Positions 58,652 to 64,000 of a stretch of 64,000 bases of DNA are shown in pieces (the first letter of the stretch is position 1; every line of letters starts with the position of its first letter). A program made the translations under genes and the position numbers. The notes under the pieces were generated by a model. That model was not told the origin of the DNA. It searched no databases and worked only from the letters and a program-made list of their open reading frames with translations. The DNA is from Diplonema japonicum. Its lineage: Eukaryota > Protista > Euglenozoa: Diplonemea. The DNA lies in NCBI GenBank assembly GCA_964019335.1, contig OZ025653.1:62001-126000 (forward strand), read 5' to 3'.

Positions 58652-58856
58652 CGCCTCACATCTCTAAAACCCATTTAGCACCCTTGTGTTCGGAGGACAC
58701 AGAAACCTGCTATTTCGCTATTTCTCAAAACTATATAACCCGTTAGACTCGTGAGTTCTTTTTGACAATTGACCTTTTTGTGCATCTTCCGGTAAAATAT
58801 TGGGAAGAGTCCTCAGAGATAGAAAAGCTAAAAACGGATTTTAGAGATATGGGGCG
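58652..58856. mobile_element. Putative MITE (205 bp) with imperfect TIRs and TTA target duplication
   Basis: CGCCTCACATCTCTAAAA (58652-58669) versus TTTTAGAGATATGGGGCG (58839-58856), 16/18 complementary; TTA on both flanks; weaker inverted similarity continues inward. Confidence 0.6.
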
Positions 58857-58883
58857 TTATCTTTACCCAATTAAGTATCGGAT

Positions 58884-59928
58884 CTAACCCTGCTGTGTCT
58901 CGTTCTGCTTGAGGCTGCTTCGCAGTTGCTGCAGCTTCAGCGTCTCCATGATCTTCATCTGTTCTCTCTTTTCGACCTGATGCGTGTAGGGTGGTGTCAA
59001 CCTGGGGCATACCAATTCGTCGTATTCTTCGAACTGCTGGTCCGAAATGTCAACACCTGCACGCATCCCACGCCCGAAGAGAAGCATTGCCTCGTTAGGG
59101 TTGGAGTACAGTGGGTTGATGTCCTGTTGTGATGTTGCTTGTGTGAGGTGGCGCATACCTGCGATGTGTCGTCTGCTTTGTCCCAGCTCTCAAATTGTTT
59201 TGACCCTATCATTCTCTCAGAAGGCTTCAGAATCACCTTCTTCTGTTTCTTTTTGCCAAGATACTTGTTCTTGATCTGCTCCAATTCTTCCCTCGTTTGC
59301 TTTTCTTCATCCTCTTCGTGTTTCCGCTTCTCCCCCTCCCGCATGGCTTTGGTTTGCTTCTCCTTGCTTTGCCTCTCGGCTTCTCTTGCTGCTTCATGCG
59401 CTTCGGCAAACAGCTGCTTGCGTTCCTCAGCCTTTCTCTCCCTGTCTTCCGCCTGCTTACGGACCGCTTCCTCGCGCCTTCCTATCGCACGGGCCTCACG
59501 TTGTGCTTTGCTCAGAAACGTTGGCTTCTCAAGTTCCTCGCGTCTCTTAACTAAGTTGTCGCGAAGGGATTCCAATGAAACCACCTTCTCGCTGTTTTCC
59601 TTCCTTGTTACGAGTGCCTCCTCCAAGGCTTCTTCCTCTTCAGCCAGGGTCAGTGGCCTCTTCTTCCCTTTTTTTACACCTCTCAGCAACAGCACATCTT
59701 GCTTGTGGTCCACACCGCACTCCTCCAACGTCTGGTTCGGTTCTAGCGGTTCTCCGTTCAGCTGTGGTGTCTATTGAAAAGAAGCAATTCGCATACCACT
59801 ATCTCGGCATCGCCCACTCTGTAGCCCTTGTCCAGCGCAGCTCTCCGTATAATGGCTGATATCTTCTCATTAGGATCGCAGTCGACGTCAAAAGACCGCC
59901 CCCTCTGTGTCATAAACATAAACTTCAT
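58884..59928 (-). CDS. Ubiquitin-like domain fused to Prp28/DDX23 N-terminal region, lacking the DEAD-box helicase (~312 aa)
   Basis: Introns 59762-59796, 59124-59158, 58977-59012. UBL residues ~1-72. Prp28-like blocks 'KPTFLSKAQREARAI', 'ELEQIKNKYLG', 'WDKADDTSQDINPLY', 'LLFGRGMRAGVD'; TAG at 58884. Confidence 0.85.
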
Positions 59929-60065
59929 TTTTCTTCTTTGCCCGACCCGACTGTATAGATTTGTGATGGACAATTGGCTATAAATAGTTTACTGGTTTAC
60001 TGGTTAATAACATGTATGGCATGCACTCATAAGAGGTGCTCTACAGTTAATTAAGTACTTACTGT

Positions 60066-63000
60066 TTACCACTCTTCCCCGCTTCCAAAGCTCTCGCTGT
60101 CCATCTCCATCACCTGTGAGTGAGCATGCGTATTGTGTGCATACCTCTTGATCCTCTTGTCGCATCTCGTCGAACACCACCTGTGGCGCCTCATCCTCGT
60201 CAATCTCTCTCGCCCTGAAGTCAGTGTCGATGTCAGAGCAGTTCATGATGGCGTAAAGCAGCTTTTCCCGCATCACGTCCACTGTGCTGTAGTCAGGAAG
60301 TTCCAATGCGAAGAAGCACGTTGCCGCCTTTGGTAGGTAGCAGTCCGGGTACCCTTTGCAGAATAGCGGCATGATGCGCAGCTTAACAGGCAGCCTTTCC
60401 CTCCCAGCAACGAACCGCAAAAAGGCGCGTCTGTCCGATGGGGTGATCTCTTCCAAGACCTGCCACAGAAACTGTACCCTCGTATCACCCAGTCGAAGGC
60501 CGTCCAATGTCGTCCACTCTTTCAGTTCCTTGACTGTGAAATCGGGTCTTCCGCACACCTTCAGCTCGAGGTCCTTCCAAGTCGTGAGGTGAAAGATGTA
60601 CTCAGGTATGACCCCAAACAAGCCGTTTCTGATGGCCTGAACTTGTAAGTCGGATTCATTAAGCCGTGCTGACACCACGAGAGATGCATAGTCCTCAAGA
60701 CGCTCGAAAGGGACGGTTGTGTTCAGTCCGTTGTGCACCAGCTCGAAAACGGTGCCGTCGGAAAGGTGTGTCGAGAAGGTCTCTGTGGAGAAGGTCCTGT
60801 TGTACATGTCCTCGGTGACGCCGTTGCGACTAAGCGACGAGAAATTGTCGATGCACTGGTAGCACAGCTTGTCGAAGCAATCCAGGTCAGACATGCCGAC
60901 AGGCTGGCCCACGATCTTCTTCCAGATCACAGGAGGCAAGTACAGCGAGAGGGGTTCATTGCTGCGGATAGCGCCCCCCATCAGCCTACCCAAAAACTCG
61001 AACATCCCTATATGAATGGGAAGAGTAGCGGAAGGGTTGATGACGTAGCAGTCCCTGTGAGTCCCGACCCCCGAACGCTGGTTGGGCGATTGTATAAACA
61101 GGGGGACAGCAGAGCTCATGAGTTCCGTACACATTTCTGTGATATGTTCTCTGTAAGGTCCACCTACATCCTCGGCGCCCTCACCCGCAAAAATAACCGA
61201 CCAGAACCTCTGACTTGTTTTGAACATTGAGGGTGGGTGACTGCCGAGCAACTCGTACGTCTGGCCATACAAACTGGACTGCCCTGTCTTGTCGATATCC
61301 GGGAACTGGCGGTTCCTTGCTGCCTTTCGTCTATTAAGGGTGATTCTGATAGGCTCTGCTTTGCCATTTGTGGTCTTTATGATGCTGCGCATGATGTCGT
61401 CAGCAATATTCTGAAAAAGCAGCCCGCGCACACCCATTAAGACAGAAGCCACAGAGTCAGCCCTGTGTGACATTTCAAAGTTCACAAGAGGGACGACTGT
61501 GAAGATTATTCTATTGAACCTTTTAATGACAGCAACACGCTTTGCGATTTCCTCCTCTGACACAGATTGCAACTGGGGGTAGTGCTCCCAGACGTCAGGT
61601 GACAGGGCCCTGTCGAGAGACACCTGATGAAGGTTTTTGCGTTGTGCTCTGCACAGACTATTCACTAAAGAAACGATTTGTTTGTCAACTTGTACTCCCC
61701 ACCCCGTCTGCTCTTTTTGCTGCTCTGCCCAGCTCTGCTTTGACGAATTGTAGAAGTTGTCGATCCTTTCCAGCCATGTGTCAGGGACACCTAGTGCAGA
61801 ATACGAACGAGGCAAGAACTTCAACGGTGTACCACCAAAGTTGAAAGTGCAGCCATTGTTTGCCCTAAACGAGGCTGCTGGGTAGATGCCGTCTTCGCTA
61901 TCGATTTTAAAGAGAATGTGGCTGCCCTCCTCGTCCAACACGGACTCGCCGTTCAATGTGAAGCTCATGACACCTAGGCCTGAGTCGCTCAGGTTGACCT
62001 TGCACCCCAACACGTCTCCCGCCGCCCATCTCTTGGGAATCAGCGCAACTGGCTGGCTCGAGTGCCACTTCTGACAGCGGAAGAGATCAACTGCCCACGA
62101 GTGTTCGTCATCACCCACCCCAAGGCCTCCGACCGCCTTAGGTACGTACTTGTCAGTAGCCCATCCGATCTGCATCAGGCCATGGCTTGCCAAGGTCACT
62201 TCGTAATACCACTTCCCTTGCTGCACCTTGACATTGGCCTTCACACTGTAAAATGCTGTTCCAGAGTTCTTGCATTCCAAGCCATTTGAAATCACTCCAT
62301 CTGTCACGATGAGCTCAACGTACTGCGGCCCCACCCTGTGCGGTATGTTCTTGAAATGGTCGATCGCGTCGTAGAAGTATGGGGGCAAAGGATAGCCGTT
62401 GATCAAGCACTTACTGGTGTCCACGAGGGCATGTAATTGATTGAACGGCAGGGCCTCATTCAGGACCAAGTGCAAAGGACGGATAGAGCGGTAGTCTTGC
62501 GGTTGCTCGTACTCAAATGGTGCACTGCCAAGGTTGATAAGGACACCGTCGCGCGACTCGATCATGACAGCAGGGAAGACTGCTTCGTCAGGGTGAAGGG
62601 AGAACTTGCACGATGCGAACCACCGCCTGCTCATCGAGAATGATATTGTGCCAATGTCAAGGTCCACTTCCACCCCGACGGCGTACCTGGGAAAGTTGTA
62701 CCGAGGAACGCTGTGCTCAACCTGTCCGCAACTCGACACACCGTACACAGTGTGCCACCCCCAACTGCGTAGTTTTCCATCTTCGCTACTCTTCGAGGAC
62801 ACGATACCTATGGTCAGTCCCCCACGCCCAGTTAGCTGCTTCACTTCGAAATACCATTTTCCTGTGCTCAATCTTGCGTTTGCCTTTACCACCAAGTTCT
62901 CAGCCCCTGCCCACACAATTCGCCTCCCATCGCAGTCATGGTCCACTTTGAAATTTTTCGCTTCCACTTCTTCGAACTCCTCTCCAGACACGTCCCCGTT

Positions 63001-64000
63001 GCCCAGAACATTGTTCCAGATTGACTCAGCGCTGCGTACTGCTAAAAACAGTTCCGTGAGGCTTTGAACGATCTTCGAGTGCAGAACGCAATTCCCGTTT
63101 ACCTGCTCACGGGCGTATTGCGCTTCGAGTGCTTGTTTCAAAGGCATCAGTACACCGAGGTTGGGTATCTGGTATGTAGGCCAGTCAAGCGGATTGCTCA
63201 CAACCTGCCGGATAACAGACAGCAGCAGCCTCCGGTGATACGACTGAGTATGGGCCACGGCCGACAAGAGCGCATGGAACATCTGGCGCGGCTTTGGGAG
63301 AGGCTGTGCTGTAGTAGTGCAATAATTAACAAGCTGCTCGAGGAAAGCAAGACCAAGTTCGAACCTCTCGAACCCGTACTGGACGATAAGCTTGTAGCCC
63401 CACCCGCCGGACGTGCTGTCAGTGTGGTAGTGATAATAGAAACACGGCAGATTGATTGAAAGAGGCGGCCATGGCTTGATCCCTGCGTTCCTCACGATGA
63501 CTCTCTTGCACTCTGGATCAGCTGCGATGGTAAGGACCTCCGGTCCAACCTCGGTACTCCTTGGATCGATCAAAACCCTGTACTGCGTGTGCCCTGGTAT
63601 ACCAACACTGCAGGGGCCTGTCTTTGGCACCTTGACATATGGGTGGGTTGACTCTCGTATAATGAAGCTCGGTACCTCTTCTATCAGGGCGAGACTTTCG
63701 TCTAAAAGATCAGACATCATATTGGAACTGGAAGGTGTCTCGCTGAGCATTCTTAGCAGCTGTGACTGCACGATCTCAGCGGCGGCCAGCTGGCCGCTAT
63801 CGACTAGAACGCGCTGCAGGCTGCACACGGTTGCTGTGCCTCCAAGATCGTCGACAGACATCCTGACGTCGTCGGGCCAGTTGGCAATGACCTGAACCAG
63901 CAGGACACGTGCATAAAGGCAGCTCACCAATAGCTGCGCCTGGTTCAGCTCGACTAACATCTCTTCCTGTCCGAGCGTATGGAGCTCTTCCCACAAAGCA
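60066..64000 (-). CDS. Large HECT E3 ubiquitin ligase with two SPRY domains (5' end outside window)
   Basis: SPRY 'GKWYFEVK', 'GKWYYEVT..GLMQIGW'; HECT 'FAGEGAEDVGGPYRE', catalytic 'LPKAATCF'; final intron 60114-60144 gives 'VMEMDSESFGSGEEW*'. Confidence 0.93.

What the first reader, a model, noticed from the sequence alone, without database searches (positions are those of the whole stretch)
58884..59928. Helicase-less Prp28: a UBL domain fused to only the N-terminal anchor region of Prp28/DDX23
Seen: three GT-AG introns give an intact 312-aa frame. It has a ubiquitin-like fold ending LLLRGV (no di-Gly, so probably neither cleaved nor conjugated), then blocks matching DDX23/Prp28 N-terminal motifs as I recall them (KPxFLSKAxREA, ELxxIKxxYLG, WDxxxDTSxDxNPLY, LxGRGxxAGxD). 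It stops just before the region leading into the DEAD-box core. Only ~300 nt separate the stop from the next gene, so no helicase exon fits. Established: this N-terminal region tethers Prp28 to the U5/tri-snRNP (Prp8/Snu114/Brr2), while the helicase core transfers the 5' splice site from U1 to U6. Inference: either Prp28 is split into an anchor subunit and a separate helicase, or this is a non-catalytic paralog marking or blocking the Prp28 site. It could, for example, distinguish cis- from SL trans-spliceosomes, with the UBL acting as a Hub1-like docking module.
Basis: partly seen in the sequence, partly recalled or inferred. Interest (0 to 1): 0.85.

Follow-up and report, generated by a model that had tools for sequence, protein, structure and literature searches.

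The report
Stand-alone Prp28 plug fused to ubiquitin-like domain
In this marine protist (a diplonemid) the part of the splicing helicase Prp28 that docks onto the spliceosome core is made as its own small protein, fused to a ubiquitin-like domain. The helicase engine is encoded by a separate gene elsewhere, so nature has split an essential splicing factor into docking and motor parts.

Summary
A minus-strand gene (58884-59928) with three GTATGC..AG introns of 35, 35 and 36 nt encodes 312 aa. It has a ubiquitin-like domain without a di-Gly end, then a region colinear with human DDX23/PRP28 from about residue 138 into the 320s. That region includes the Pfam DDX23-like domain (PF25430), which is the PRP8-binding "N-plug". 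Spliced, spliced-leader-capped RNA contigs confirm all three introns and run through the stop codon into the 3' UTR. Differences from a close relative are 12 synonymous to 4 non-synonymous.

The same 62.5-Mb genome has one further relevant gene, on another contig: a true Prp28/DDX23 helicase of 653 aa. It starts where the window protein's homology stops and has no detectable plug. PF25430 occurs only once in the genome, at this locus.

Helicase-less orthologues with the ubiquitin-like domain occur in Rhynchopus, Artemidia and other diplonemids. Euglenids (Euglena, Rhabdomonas) have the plug protein without that domain. All form one clade (100/99 support).

So Prp28 appears split in diplonemids and probably in euglenids, whose helicase was not examined here, and the ubiquitin-like domain is a diplonemid addition. 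I found no report of this. Binding to Prp8, any pairing with the helicase and any link to trans-splicing are inferred, not shown.

The parts
59951..59952 (-). Spliced-leader (SL) trans-splice acceptor AG. The mature mRNA body starts at 59950.
   Evidence: In one search, the loose ends of RNA contigs in X1 and X2 at 59951 read (reverse-complemented) ...TCCTAAAGCTACAGTTTCTGTACTTTATT. In one search, the same sequence followed by G|GT occurs 151 times in this genome (1 mismatch allowed; control 0).
59929..59950 (-). 5' UTR, 22 nt.
59797..59928 (-). Exon 1: 44 codons, the first half of the ubiquitin-like domain.
   Evidence: It aligns with residues 1-44 of orthologue P0001.
59762..59796 (-). Intron 1: 35 nt, GTATGC...CACAG.
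   Evidence: Joint in RNA contigs of X1 and X2. The corrected exon 2 start aligns with P0001 without a gap.
59675..59761 (-). Second half of the ubiquitin-like domain, ending LLLRGV with no di-Gly.
   Evidence: In orthologue P0002 the domain folds as ubiquitin/NEDD8 (pLDDT above 90, TM 0.84-0.90). P0001 matches Pfam ubiquitin at E=3.4e-5, just under the cut-off.
59159..59761 (-). Exon 2: 201 codons. It holds the UBL end, a linker, VVSLESLR..KPTFLSKAQREA (59492-59527), a charged helix, ELEQIKNKYLG (59255-59287) and FESWDKADDTSQ (59159-59194), which starts the PF25430 domain.
59124..59158 (-). Intron 2: 35 nt, GTATGC...AACAG.
   Evidence: Joint in X1 and X2. The ORF of orthologue P0001 reads into an intron that starts GTATGC at the same codon.
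59013..59123 (-). Exon 3: 37 codons, DINPLY...LFGRGMRAGVD...YDEL. This is the core of the DDX23-like domain (N-plug).
   Evidence: PF25430 at E=1.1e-6. Aligns with human DDX23 residues 285-316.
58977..59012 (-). Intron 3: 36 nt, GTATGC...ATCAG.
   Evidence: Joint in X1 and X2.
58884..58976 (-). Exon 4: 30 codons of charged helical tail, then the TAG stop.
   Evidence: RNA contigs cross the stop unspliced.
58657..58883 (-). 3' UTR. It reaches at least 58816, and in one RNA contig of a relative about 58657. It contains a short, highly repeated 31-nt element at 58834-58864.
   Evidence: table 8.

Best explanation
The gene encodes a real, expressed, conserved 312-aa protein. It consists of a non-conjugatable ubiquitin-like domain and the whole N-terminal docking region of Prp28/DDX23, and it has no helicase. 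In human pre-B spliceosomes this docking region is PRP28 residues 273-327, the 'N-plug'. It sits on the PRP8 N-terminal domain and stays there even after the RecA domains have left. The C-terminal region of MFAP1 replaces it in the B complex.

In diplonemids the plug is a separate polypeptide. The Prp28 helicase is encoded elsewhere and lacks the plug. Euglenids also have the stand-alone plug protein, but I could not check whether their helicase lacks the plug.

Most likely mechanism (inferred): the plug protein is a stand-alone tri-snRNP/U5 subunit. It occupies the PRP8-NTD site before activation and is displaced by MFAP1. The helicase is recruited separately, as yeast Prp28 is said to be, when a U1-bound 5' splice site has to be handed to U6. 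The UBL, added in the diplonemid lineage, would be an extra docking surface.

Shown: the gene structure, expression, homology, the split and its taxonomic spread. Inferred: Prp8 binding, timing and the role of the UBL.
For: - Gene model and expression: three introns, SL capping and read-through of the stop codon in RNA contigs.
- Selection: 12 synonymous to 4 non-synonymous differences over 193 and 743 sites, pN/pS about 0.09.
- Homology: colinear match to human DDX23 141-316. PF25430 on exon 3. Complete orthologues match positions 1-80 or more of the 85 in PF25430, at 35-74 bits, with no DEAD or Helicase_C domain.
- Copy number: single copy, and the only PF25430 match in the 62.5-Mb genome.
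- Separate helicase: L032, six exons, 653 aa. Its best PDB matches are Prp28 at 190 bits and DDX23 at 183, against DDX46 at 114. Homology to DDX23 starts at about residue 314-355. hhalign probability against the plug family is 0.1%.
- Orthologues with the UBL and no helicase: Rhynchopus euleeides, Artemidia motanka and three unnamed sequences.
- Orthologues without the UBL and without a helicase: Euglena gracilis, E. longa, E. mutabilis and Rhabdomonas costata (same calls).
- Phylogeny: the helicase-less sequences are one side of a 100/99 branch against 26 canonical DDX23 N-termini.
- Literature: PRP28 NTD residues 273-327 remain on the PRP8 NTD, and MFAP1 CTR binding is mutually exclusive (PMC11208138). 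The N-plug stays on PRP8 when the catalytic domain is invisible (PMC11143319).
- MFAP1 is present in this genome at 170 bits.
Against: - No binding or localisation data exist for any of these proteins.
- The plug segment is predicted disordered in isolation (pLDDT below 50). This is expected for a docking peptide but gives no structural support.
- I could not examine the helicase orthologues of euglenids or other diplonemids, so 'helicase lacks the plug' is shown for this genome only.
- RNA evidence comes from assembled contigs of a relative that differs by 2-3%, labelled RNA only by guess. The SL and the joints argue for RNA.
- Helicase residues 163-178 (NPKKRFGARAREYQ) align by BLASTP to the GRG motif region of a canonical DDX23. 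They could be a weak relic of a plug.
Confidence: 0.55

Rival explanations
1. Two-subunit Prp28 holoenzyme. The plug protein and the helicase form a stable heterodimer that rebuilds a human-type, tri-snRNP-tethered Prp28. The contact could be between the plug protein's C-terminal charged helix and the helicase's own 160-180-aa N-terminal extension.
For: - The two proteins divide DDX23 almost without overlap, at about 138-330 and about 314-820.
- Both carry a charged helical segment at the break: helix 287-336 at pLDDT 86-92 in P0002, and helicase residues about 130-160.
- Both genes are retained in a lineage that has U1 and many cis-introns (PMC12621601).
Against: - There is no evidence of interaction.
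- The helicase N-terminal extension found no relatives in the one search made (length window 140-444 aa only).
- No multimer prediction was available.
Confidence: 0.2
2. Gatekeeper for trans-splicing. SL trans-splicing uses no U1-bound 5' splice site. The plug function (closing the PRP8/U5 loop I exon site until the 5' exon arrives) was therefore uncoupled from the helicase, so that it can serve every trans-spliceosome. The helicase would serve cis-introns only, and the UBL would mark or dock the trans-specific complex.
For: - In the searches made here, the clearly complete helicase-less forms came only from Euglenozoa, the SL trans-splicing lineage.
- A published table lists PRP28 for Euglena but leaves it blank for T. 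brucei and L. major, which have almost no cis-introns (PMC10679874 supplementary table 2).
- The mRNA of this gene is itself SL-capped.
Against: - This is purely correlative.
- No plug homologue was found for kinetoplastids, which this model predicts should keep it. The searches were of limited reach.
- Other SL trans-splicing lineages were not examined.
Confidence: 0.15
3. Neofunctionalised relic. The protein no longer acts in the spliceosome. The UBL makes it an adaptor in some ubiquitin or proteasome-related pathway.
For: - UBL-X fusions are often proteasome shuttles (general knowledge).
- The Rhynchopus orthologue has lost the NPLY motif.
Against: - The plug motifs (KPxF, YLG, WDxxDDTS, FGRGxxxG) are conserved across diplonemids and euglenids, and back to human.
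- Euglenid forms have no UBL.
Confidence: 0.07
4. Artefact: a mis-assembly, a pseudogene, or a truncated gene model whose helicase exons were missed.
For: None found.
Against: - DNA contigs of separate runs span the locus in one piece (X5, 14.3-kb record).
- RNA contigs are spliced, SL-capped and cross the stop codon.
- Selection is purifying.
- Transcriptome ORFs flagged complete in Rhynchopus, Artemidia and E. longa end the same way.
- The helicase gene lies on a different contig.
Confidence: 0.03

Closest known systems
Human DDX23 / PRP28 (U5-100K), N-terminal domain or 'N-plug' (residues about 138-330; Pfam PF25430)
   Same: - The sequence is colinear with human DDX23: PxSLEEL, KPxFLSKAxRE, IKxxYLG, WDxxxDTSxDxNPLY and FGRGxxAGxD.
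- In the human protein, the segment 273-327 within this region binds the PRP8 NTD in pre-B complexes (PMC11208138, PMC11143319).
   Different: - Here it is a separate polypeptide with no RecA domains and no RS domain.
- It is preceded by a ubiquitin-like domain.
- The helicase is a second gene.
S. cerevisiae Prp28
   Same: The diplonemid helicase gene resembles it in being a Prp28 helicase with only a short N-terminal extension. By my own knowledge, yeast Prp28 is not a stable tri-snRNP component. PMC6274647 notes that it is not seen at the human position in yeast pre-B.
   Different: As far as I know, yeast has no separate plug protein. Here the plug persists as its own gene.
MFAP1 / Spp381 C-terminal region
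   Same: It binds the same PRP8-NTD surface, mutually exclusively with the PRP28 NTD (PMC11208138). Like the window protein, it is a small, charged, largely unstructured spliceosome protein.
   Different: It belongs to a different family (PF06991) and is encoded separately in this genome. The window protein has no PF06991 match.
UBL-bearing splicing factors: UBL5/Hub1, SF3A1 (C-terminal UBL), Sde2, SNRNP25
   Same: They combine a ubiquitin fold with a spliceosome role, and they lack conjugation (except Sde2, whose UBL is processed).
   Different: - No specific sequence or fold affinity to any of them was found.
- The best fold matches are NEDD8 and ubiquitin themselves.
- Here the UBL is N-terminal and fused to a Prp28 fragment.

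Membership tests
Prp28/DDX23 DEAD-box helicase | DEAD-box RecA1 and RecA2 core (PF00270 + PF00271) | tested here: not met
   - No DEAD or Helicase_C match in any exon or in complete orthologues.
- Transcripts stop at the TAG.
- The core is encoded by another gene, L032.
Prp28/DDX23 DEAD-box helicase | DDX23-like N-terminal domain (PF25430) | tested here: met
   - Exon 3 scores 29.9 bits against a cut-off of 27.
- The six-frame genome search gives 32.4 bits at this locus only.
- Orthologues score 35-74 bits over positions 1-80 or more of 85.
Prp28/DDX23 DEAD-box helicase | Colinear homology of the region upstream of PF25430 (human residues about 138-270) | tested here: met
   - phmmer aligns exon 2 to DDX23 141-283, weakly on its own (E=0.056).
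- A profile of the family recovers many canonical DDX23 N-termini at E of 1e-10 to 1e-16.
Ubiquitin-like (beta-grasp) domain | Ubiquitin fold | tested here: met
   - The AF2 model of orthologue P0002 has residues 1-60 at pLDDT above 90. Foldseek's top hits are NEDD8 and ubiquitin at probability 1.00 and TM 0.84-0.90.
- Pfam ubiquitin is just below its cut-off for P0001 (24 bits against 25.4).
- The family profile hits polyubiquitins.
- The window's own UBL is split by intron 1 and was not folded as one chain.
Conjugatable ubiquitin-type modifier | C-terminal di-glycine at the end of the fold | tested here: not met
   The fold ends LRGV in the window, LKAK in P0001, FHGS in P0004, LRGE in P0174 and LRGD in P0002.
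Hub1/UBL5-type splicing UBL | Free 73-aa UBL that binds HIND elements of Snu66/Prp38 | not tested
   It is fused, not free. No specific similarity to UBL5 appeared among the fold hits listed. Binding cannot be tested with these tools.
U5 / tri-snRNP component | Physical association with the Prp8 NTD | not testable with these tools
   Inferred only from homology to human residues 273-327 (PMC11208138).

The most novel reading that the evidence does not exclude
Euglenozoa uncoupled Prp28's two jobs. A stand-alone plug protein gates the Prp8/U5 exon-binding site in every spliceosome, including the U1-independent SL trans-spliceosomes. The helicase is called in only for U1-bound cis-introns. In diplonemids the added UBL is a docking module that selects or marks one class of complex. 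That would make this a natural separation-of-function allele of an essential splicing factor, and a handle on how cis- and trans-spliceosomes differ.
Probability: 0.2. Interest if true: 0.85.

Novelty: new variant of a known kind. Interest (0 to 1): 0.66.

Why it matters
Prp28/DDX23 is an essential, near-universal spliceosomal helicase. In humans its N-terminal plug and its motor are one chain, and what the plug does on its own is still debated: exon mimic, tether or placeholder (PMC11143319).

A lineage in which the plug is a separate, conserved, expressed protein is a natural separation-of-function experiment. Tagging or depleting each half could show what the plug does without the motor. 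This looks feasible in Paradiplonema papillatum or Euglena, which I recall (not checked here) are genetically tractable.

The split occurs in the eukaryotic group that trans-splices nearly all mRNAs without U1. It may therefore bear on how trans- and cis-spliceosomes are told apart.

It also corrects annotation. Orthology searches that look for a single Prp28 will miss the plug half or misname it; several fragments are labelled 'DDX23/PRP28 helicase'.

Tried and rejected
1. My first model of intron 1 (26 nt, 3' site at CAATAG, 315 aa) was rejected by the RNA joints and by the alignment to P0001. The real intron is 35 nt.
2. Other helicase candidates with a TAT motif III (L015, L020) are DDX5/Dbp2-like by their motifs and Gly-rich tails. 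They were dropped once L032 was found.
3. A search with helicase exon 1 for diplonemid relatives of its N-terminal extension found only canonical DDX23 fragments, at 27% coverage. The tool's length window excludes full-length helicases.
4. The many multi-stretch hits of the profile search are polyubiquitins matching the UBL, not relatives of the whole protein.
5. Idea: the UBL moved here from SF3A1. The SF3A1 homologue (L042) does seem to end without a UBL. However, the fold hits give no SF3A1-specific signal, so this is kept only as a note.
6. Kinetoplastid homologues: none among the named hits and no lead from the ESM Atlas. This is inconclusive.
7. Short DDX23N proteins of haptophyte type (P0098, P0124) with proline-rich tails come from short contigs. 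They may be exon fragments and are not counted as helicase-less forms.
8. Papers: no mention of Prp28/DDX23 in the main text of the diplonemid intron paper or the kinetoplastid intron paper. Charenton 2019 is not held.
All searches were run exon by exon by reference. Complete cDNA-derived orthologues stood in for whole-protein Pfam, fold and tree analyses, so the window's own sequence is absent from the tree and the fold.

Full report
**What is there**

On the minus strand an ATG at 59928 opens a frame that is interrupted three times by short introns, each starting GTATGC and ending AG, and closes with TAG at 58886-58884. I first placed the 3' end of intron 1 at CAATAG, giving a 26-nt intron.

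I then laid public runs on the locus. Two runs, X1 and X2, are labelled RNA only by guess and differ from the window by 2-3%. Their contigs skip exactly 59796-59762, 59158-59124 and 59012-58977. The exon 1/exon 2 junction then aligns without a gap to an intron-less orthologue.

At 59951 the same contigs carry a loose end that reads, on the mRNA strand...TCCTAAAGCTACAGTTTCTGTACTTTATT. That sequence, followed by G|GT, occurs 151 times in this genome with one mismatch and 0 times in the control. It is therefore the spliced leader. The contigs are RNA, and the mRNA starts 22 nt upstream of the ATG.

The contigs also run unspliced through the stop codon into the 3' UTR, to 58816 and about 58657. 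Two other runs (X5, X7) hold the locus unspliced; X5 spans the whole stretch in one 14-kb piece, X7 covers it in two overlapping pieces. That is the DNA form, and it argues against mis-assembly.

The intron lengths, and the A-rich tract before the 3' splice site of intron 2, fit what is published for Diplonema japonicum: median intron 41 nt and A-rich tracts (PMC12621601). Earlier notes of this scan name that species. All long ORFs of the window lie on one strand, as expected for euglenozoan polycistrons.

**Is it under selection, and is it single copy?**

Sixteen differences between the window and the RNA contigs fall in the coding sequence. Twelve are synonymous and four are not, over about 193 synonymous and 743 non-synonymous sites, so pN/pS is about 0.09. 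A six-frame search of the 62.5-Mb assembly with exon 2 finds only this locus.

**What the protein is**

- Exon 3 alone matches Pfam PF25430, the DDX23-like domain, above the curated cut-off (29.9 bits against 27).
- Against the PDB, the best match of exon 2 is human DDX23 residues 141-283, and that of exon 3 is residues 285-316. The two matches are colinear and each is weak alone.
- A profile built from exons 1-2 and the one close homologue (P0001) was searched against 1.84 billion proteins. It gave 296 hits at E of 1e-3 or better. These fell into three groups: helicase-less proteins with the same architecture, many canonical DDX23 N-termini, and polyubiquitins that match the N-terminal domain.
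- The complete orthologues carry almost the whole PF25430 model (positions 1-80 or more of 85, at 35-74 bits) and no DEAD or Helicase_C domain.
- The N-terminal domain is ubiquitin-like. Pfam ubiquitin gives E=3.4e-5 for P0001, just under the cut-off. An AlphaFold model of orthologue P0002 has pLDDT above 90 there and superposes on NEDD8 and ubiquitin at TM 0.84-0.90.
- None of the orthologues has a di-Gly end, so processing or conjugation is unlikely.

**Where the helicase is**

PF25430 has a single match in the whole genome, at this locus. A search with the DEAD domain gave 42 matches. After screening motifs, one stood out: G000:C20:373924-374379, fetched as L032.

I built a six-exon, 653-aa model for it, with five GTATG..AG introns of 32-42 nt.

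- Exon 2 scores 190 bits against Chaetomium Prp28 and 183 against human DDX23. The next family, DDX46, scores 114.
- Exon 1 residues 179-253 match DDX23 from the HWSxKxLxxMTxRDWRIFRED motif onward.
- The C-terminus (...RKKRETVIHARTF) resembles the C-terminus of human DDX23 as I recall it.
- The ATPase motifs are present, with SST at motif III and QRIGRTGRQG at motif VI.
- The first 160-180 residues have no Pfam match and no similarity to the plug family (hhalign probability 0.1%).
- BLASTP to a canonical full-length DDX23 starts only at residue 163, just after where the plug ends.

So the window protein covers DDX23 from about 138 to about 330, and the helicase covers it from about 314 or 355 to the end. 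The two genes lie on different contigs.

**How widespread it is**

Cluster look-ups name the orthologues.

| Form | Organism and protein |
|---|---|
| UBL + plug, no helicase | Rhynchopus euleeides (P0004, 362 aa) |
| UBL + plug, no helicase | Artemidia motanka (P0174, 362 aa; ORF flagged complete) |
| UBL + plug, no helicase | Three unnamed sequences (P0001, P0002, P0005) |
| Plug only, no UBL, no helicase | Rhabdomonas costata (P0014, 267 aa) |
| Plug only, no UBL, no helicase | Euglena gracilis (P0177, 245 aa) |
| Plug only, no UBL, no helicase | E. longa (P0200, 308 aa; ORF flagged complete) |
| Plug only, no UBL, no helicase | E. mutabilis (P0176) |

In a maximum-likelihood tree of the plug region, the eight complete helicase-less proteins sit on one side of a 100/99 branch, with 26 canonical DDX23 N-termini on the other. 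The window's own sequence was left out of the tree because it would have needed joining.

This fits a single split before euglenids and diplonemids diverged, with the UBL added in diplonemids; both Hemistasiidae and Diplonemidae have it. It could also simply mirror the species tree.

No full-length euglenozoan DDX23 carrying a plug appeared in the 150 best hits. Only eight canonical hits of 524-745 aa could be placed in the tree, and the search library gives no organism names. The library includes these transcriptomes.

No kinetoplastid homologue was found, but my searches there were weak. A published table lists PRP28 for Euglena and leaves it blank for T. brucei and L. major (PMC10679874, supplementary table 2).

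**How it probably works**

- In human cross-exon pre-B complexes, PRP28 NTD residues 273-327 stay on the PRP8 NTD after the RecA domains have gone. The MFAP1 C-terminal region binds the same place in a mutually exclusive way (PMC11208138).
- Another structure paper calls this segment the N-plug. It reports that the plug remains on PRP8 when the catalytic domain is invisible, and notes an earlier proposal that it mimics the exon near U5 loop I (PMC11143319).
- That segment is the part of human DDX23 that aligns with the end of exon 2, exon 3 and (by comparison with the orthologues) the start of exon 4.
- MFAP1 is present in this genome at 170 bits, and U1 snRNA is reported for the species.

I therefore think the protein is a stand-alone plug or anchor on Prp8 in the tri-snRNP, displaced on the way to the B complex, with the helicase recruited separately.

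Three questions stay open: whether the two proteins pair up, whether the uncoupling serves U1-independent SL trans-splicing, and what the UBL binds. All of the mechanism rests on homology. The plug segment itself is predicted disordered when alone.

**Comparison with what is known, and novelty**

The protein belongs to the PF25430 family, but it fails the defining test of a DEAD-box helicase. It works like the N-terminal domain of human PRP28 rather than like Prp28 as a whole. Full-text searches found no report of a split Prp28 or of a UBL-Prp28 fusion. The scan's earlier notes hold none either.

I rate it a new variant of a known kind. It is of clear interest to spliceosome and euglenozoan biologists, with a solid factual core and an untested mechanism.

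**Limits**

- Reads could be laid only once, so the expression of the helicase gene is not checked.
- The RNA evidence comes from assembled contigs of a close relative, not raw reads of this strain.

Noticed in passing
L032 (G000:C20:373123-375270, + strand): This is the partner Prp28/DDX23 helicase gene: six exons, 653 aa. It has unusual motif III (SST instead of SAT/TAT) and motif VI (QRIGRTGRQG). Residues 163-178 (NPKKRFGARAREYQ) align to the GRG motif region of a canonical DDX23, possibly a relic of a lost plug.
   Followed up: partly
window 58834-58864 and 58716-58839: A 31-nt element in the 3' UTR is covered at many times the local depth in all four runs, with different flanks, so it is a dispersed short repeat. 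In the DNA-like runs X5 and X7, a second form replaces 58717-58838 with 112 other letters.
   Followed up: no
L042 (G000:C70:175178-178372, - strand): The SF3A1/Prp21 homologue has two SURP-like repeats (by eye) and a PRP21_like_P match. It appears to end (...KEMAKEEEQ*) without the C-terminal ubiquitin-like domain that human SF3A1 carries. In human pre-B the SF3A1 C-terminus lies in the same tri-snRNP core region as the PRP28 NTD.
   Followed up: partly
P0132 / P0168 (Logan contigs, organism unknown): A DDX23 homologue with a complete plug but degenerate ATPase motifs (EESSGKT for motif I, no DEAD box). It may be a pseudo-helicase Prp28 in some other eukaryote.
   Followed up: no
P0098 cluster (20 members, one from Phaeocystis antarctica) and P0124: Short (230-300 aa) DDX23 N-terminal proteins that leave the DDX23 sequence right after the GRG motif and end in proline-rich tails. 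They could be exon fragments or further helicase-less forms in haptophytes.
   Followed up: partly
window 60004-63996 (- strand): The upstream neighbour is a very long intron-less ORF of more than 1330 aa. By eye it has two SPRY-like segments and a HECT-type C-terminus. It runs off the window.
   Followed up: no
G000, 151 places: The spliced-leader exon plus GT occurs at least 151 times across many contigs, often near contig ends. This agrees with earlier scan notes on SL-headed retroelements at chromosome ends.
   Followed up: no
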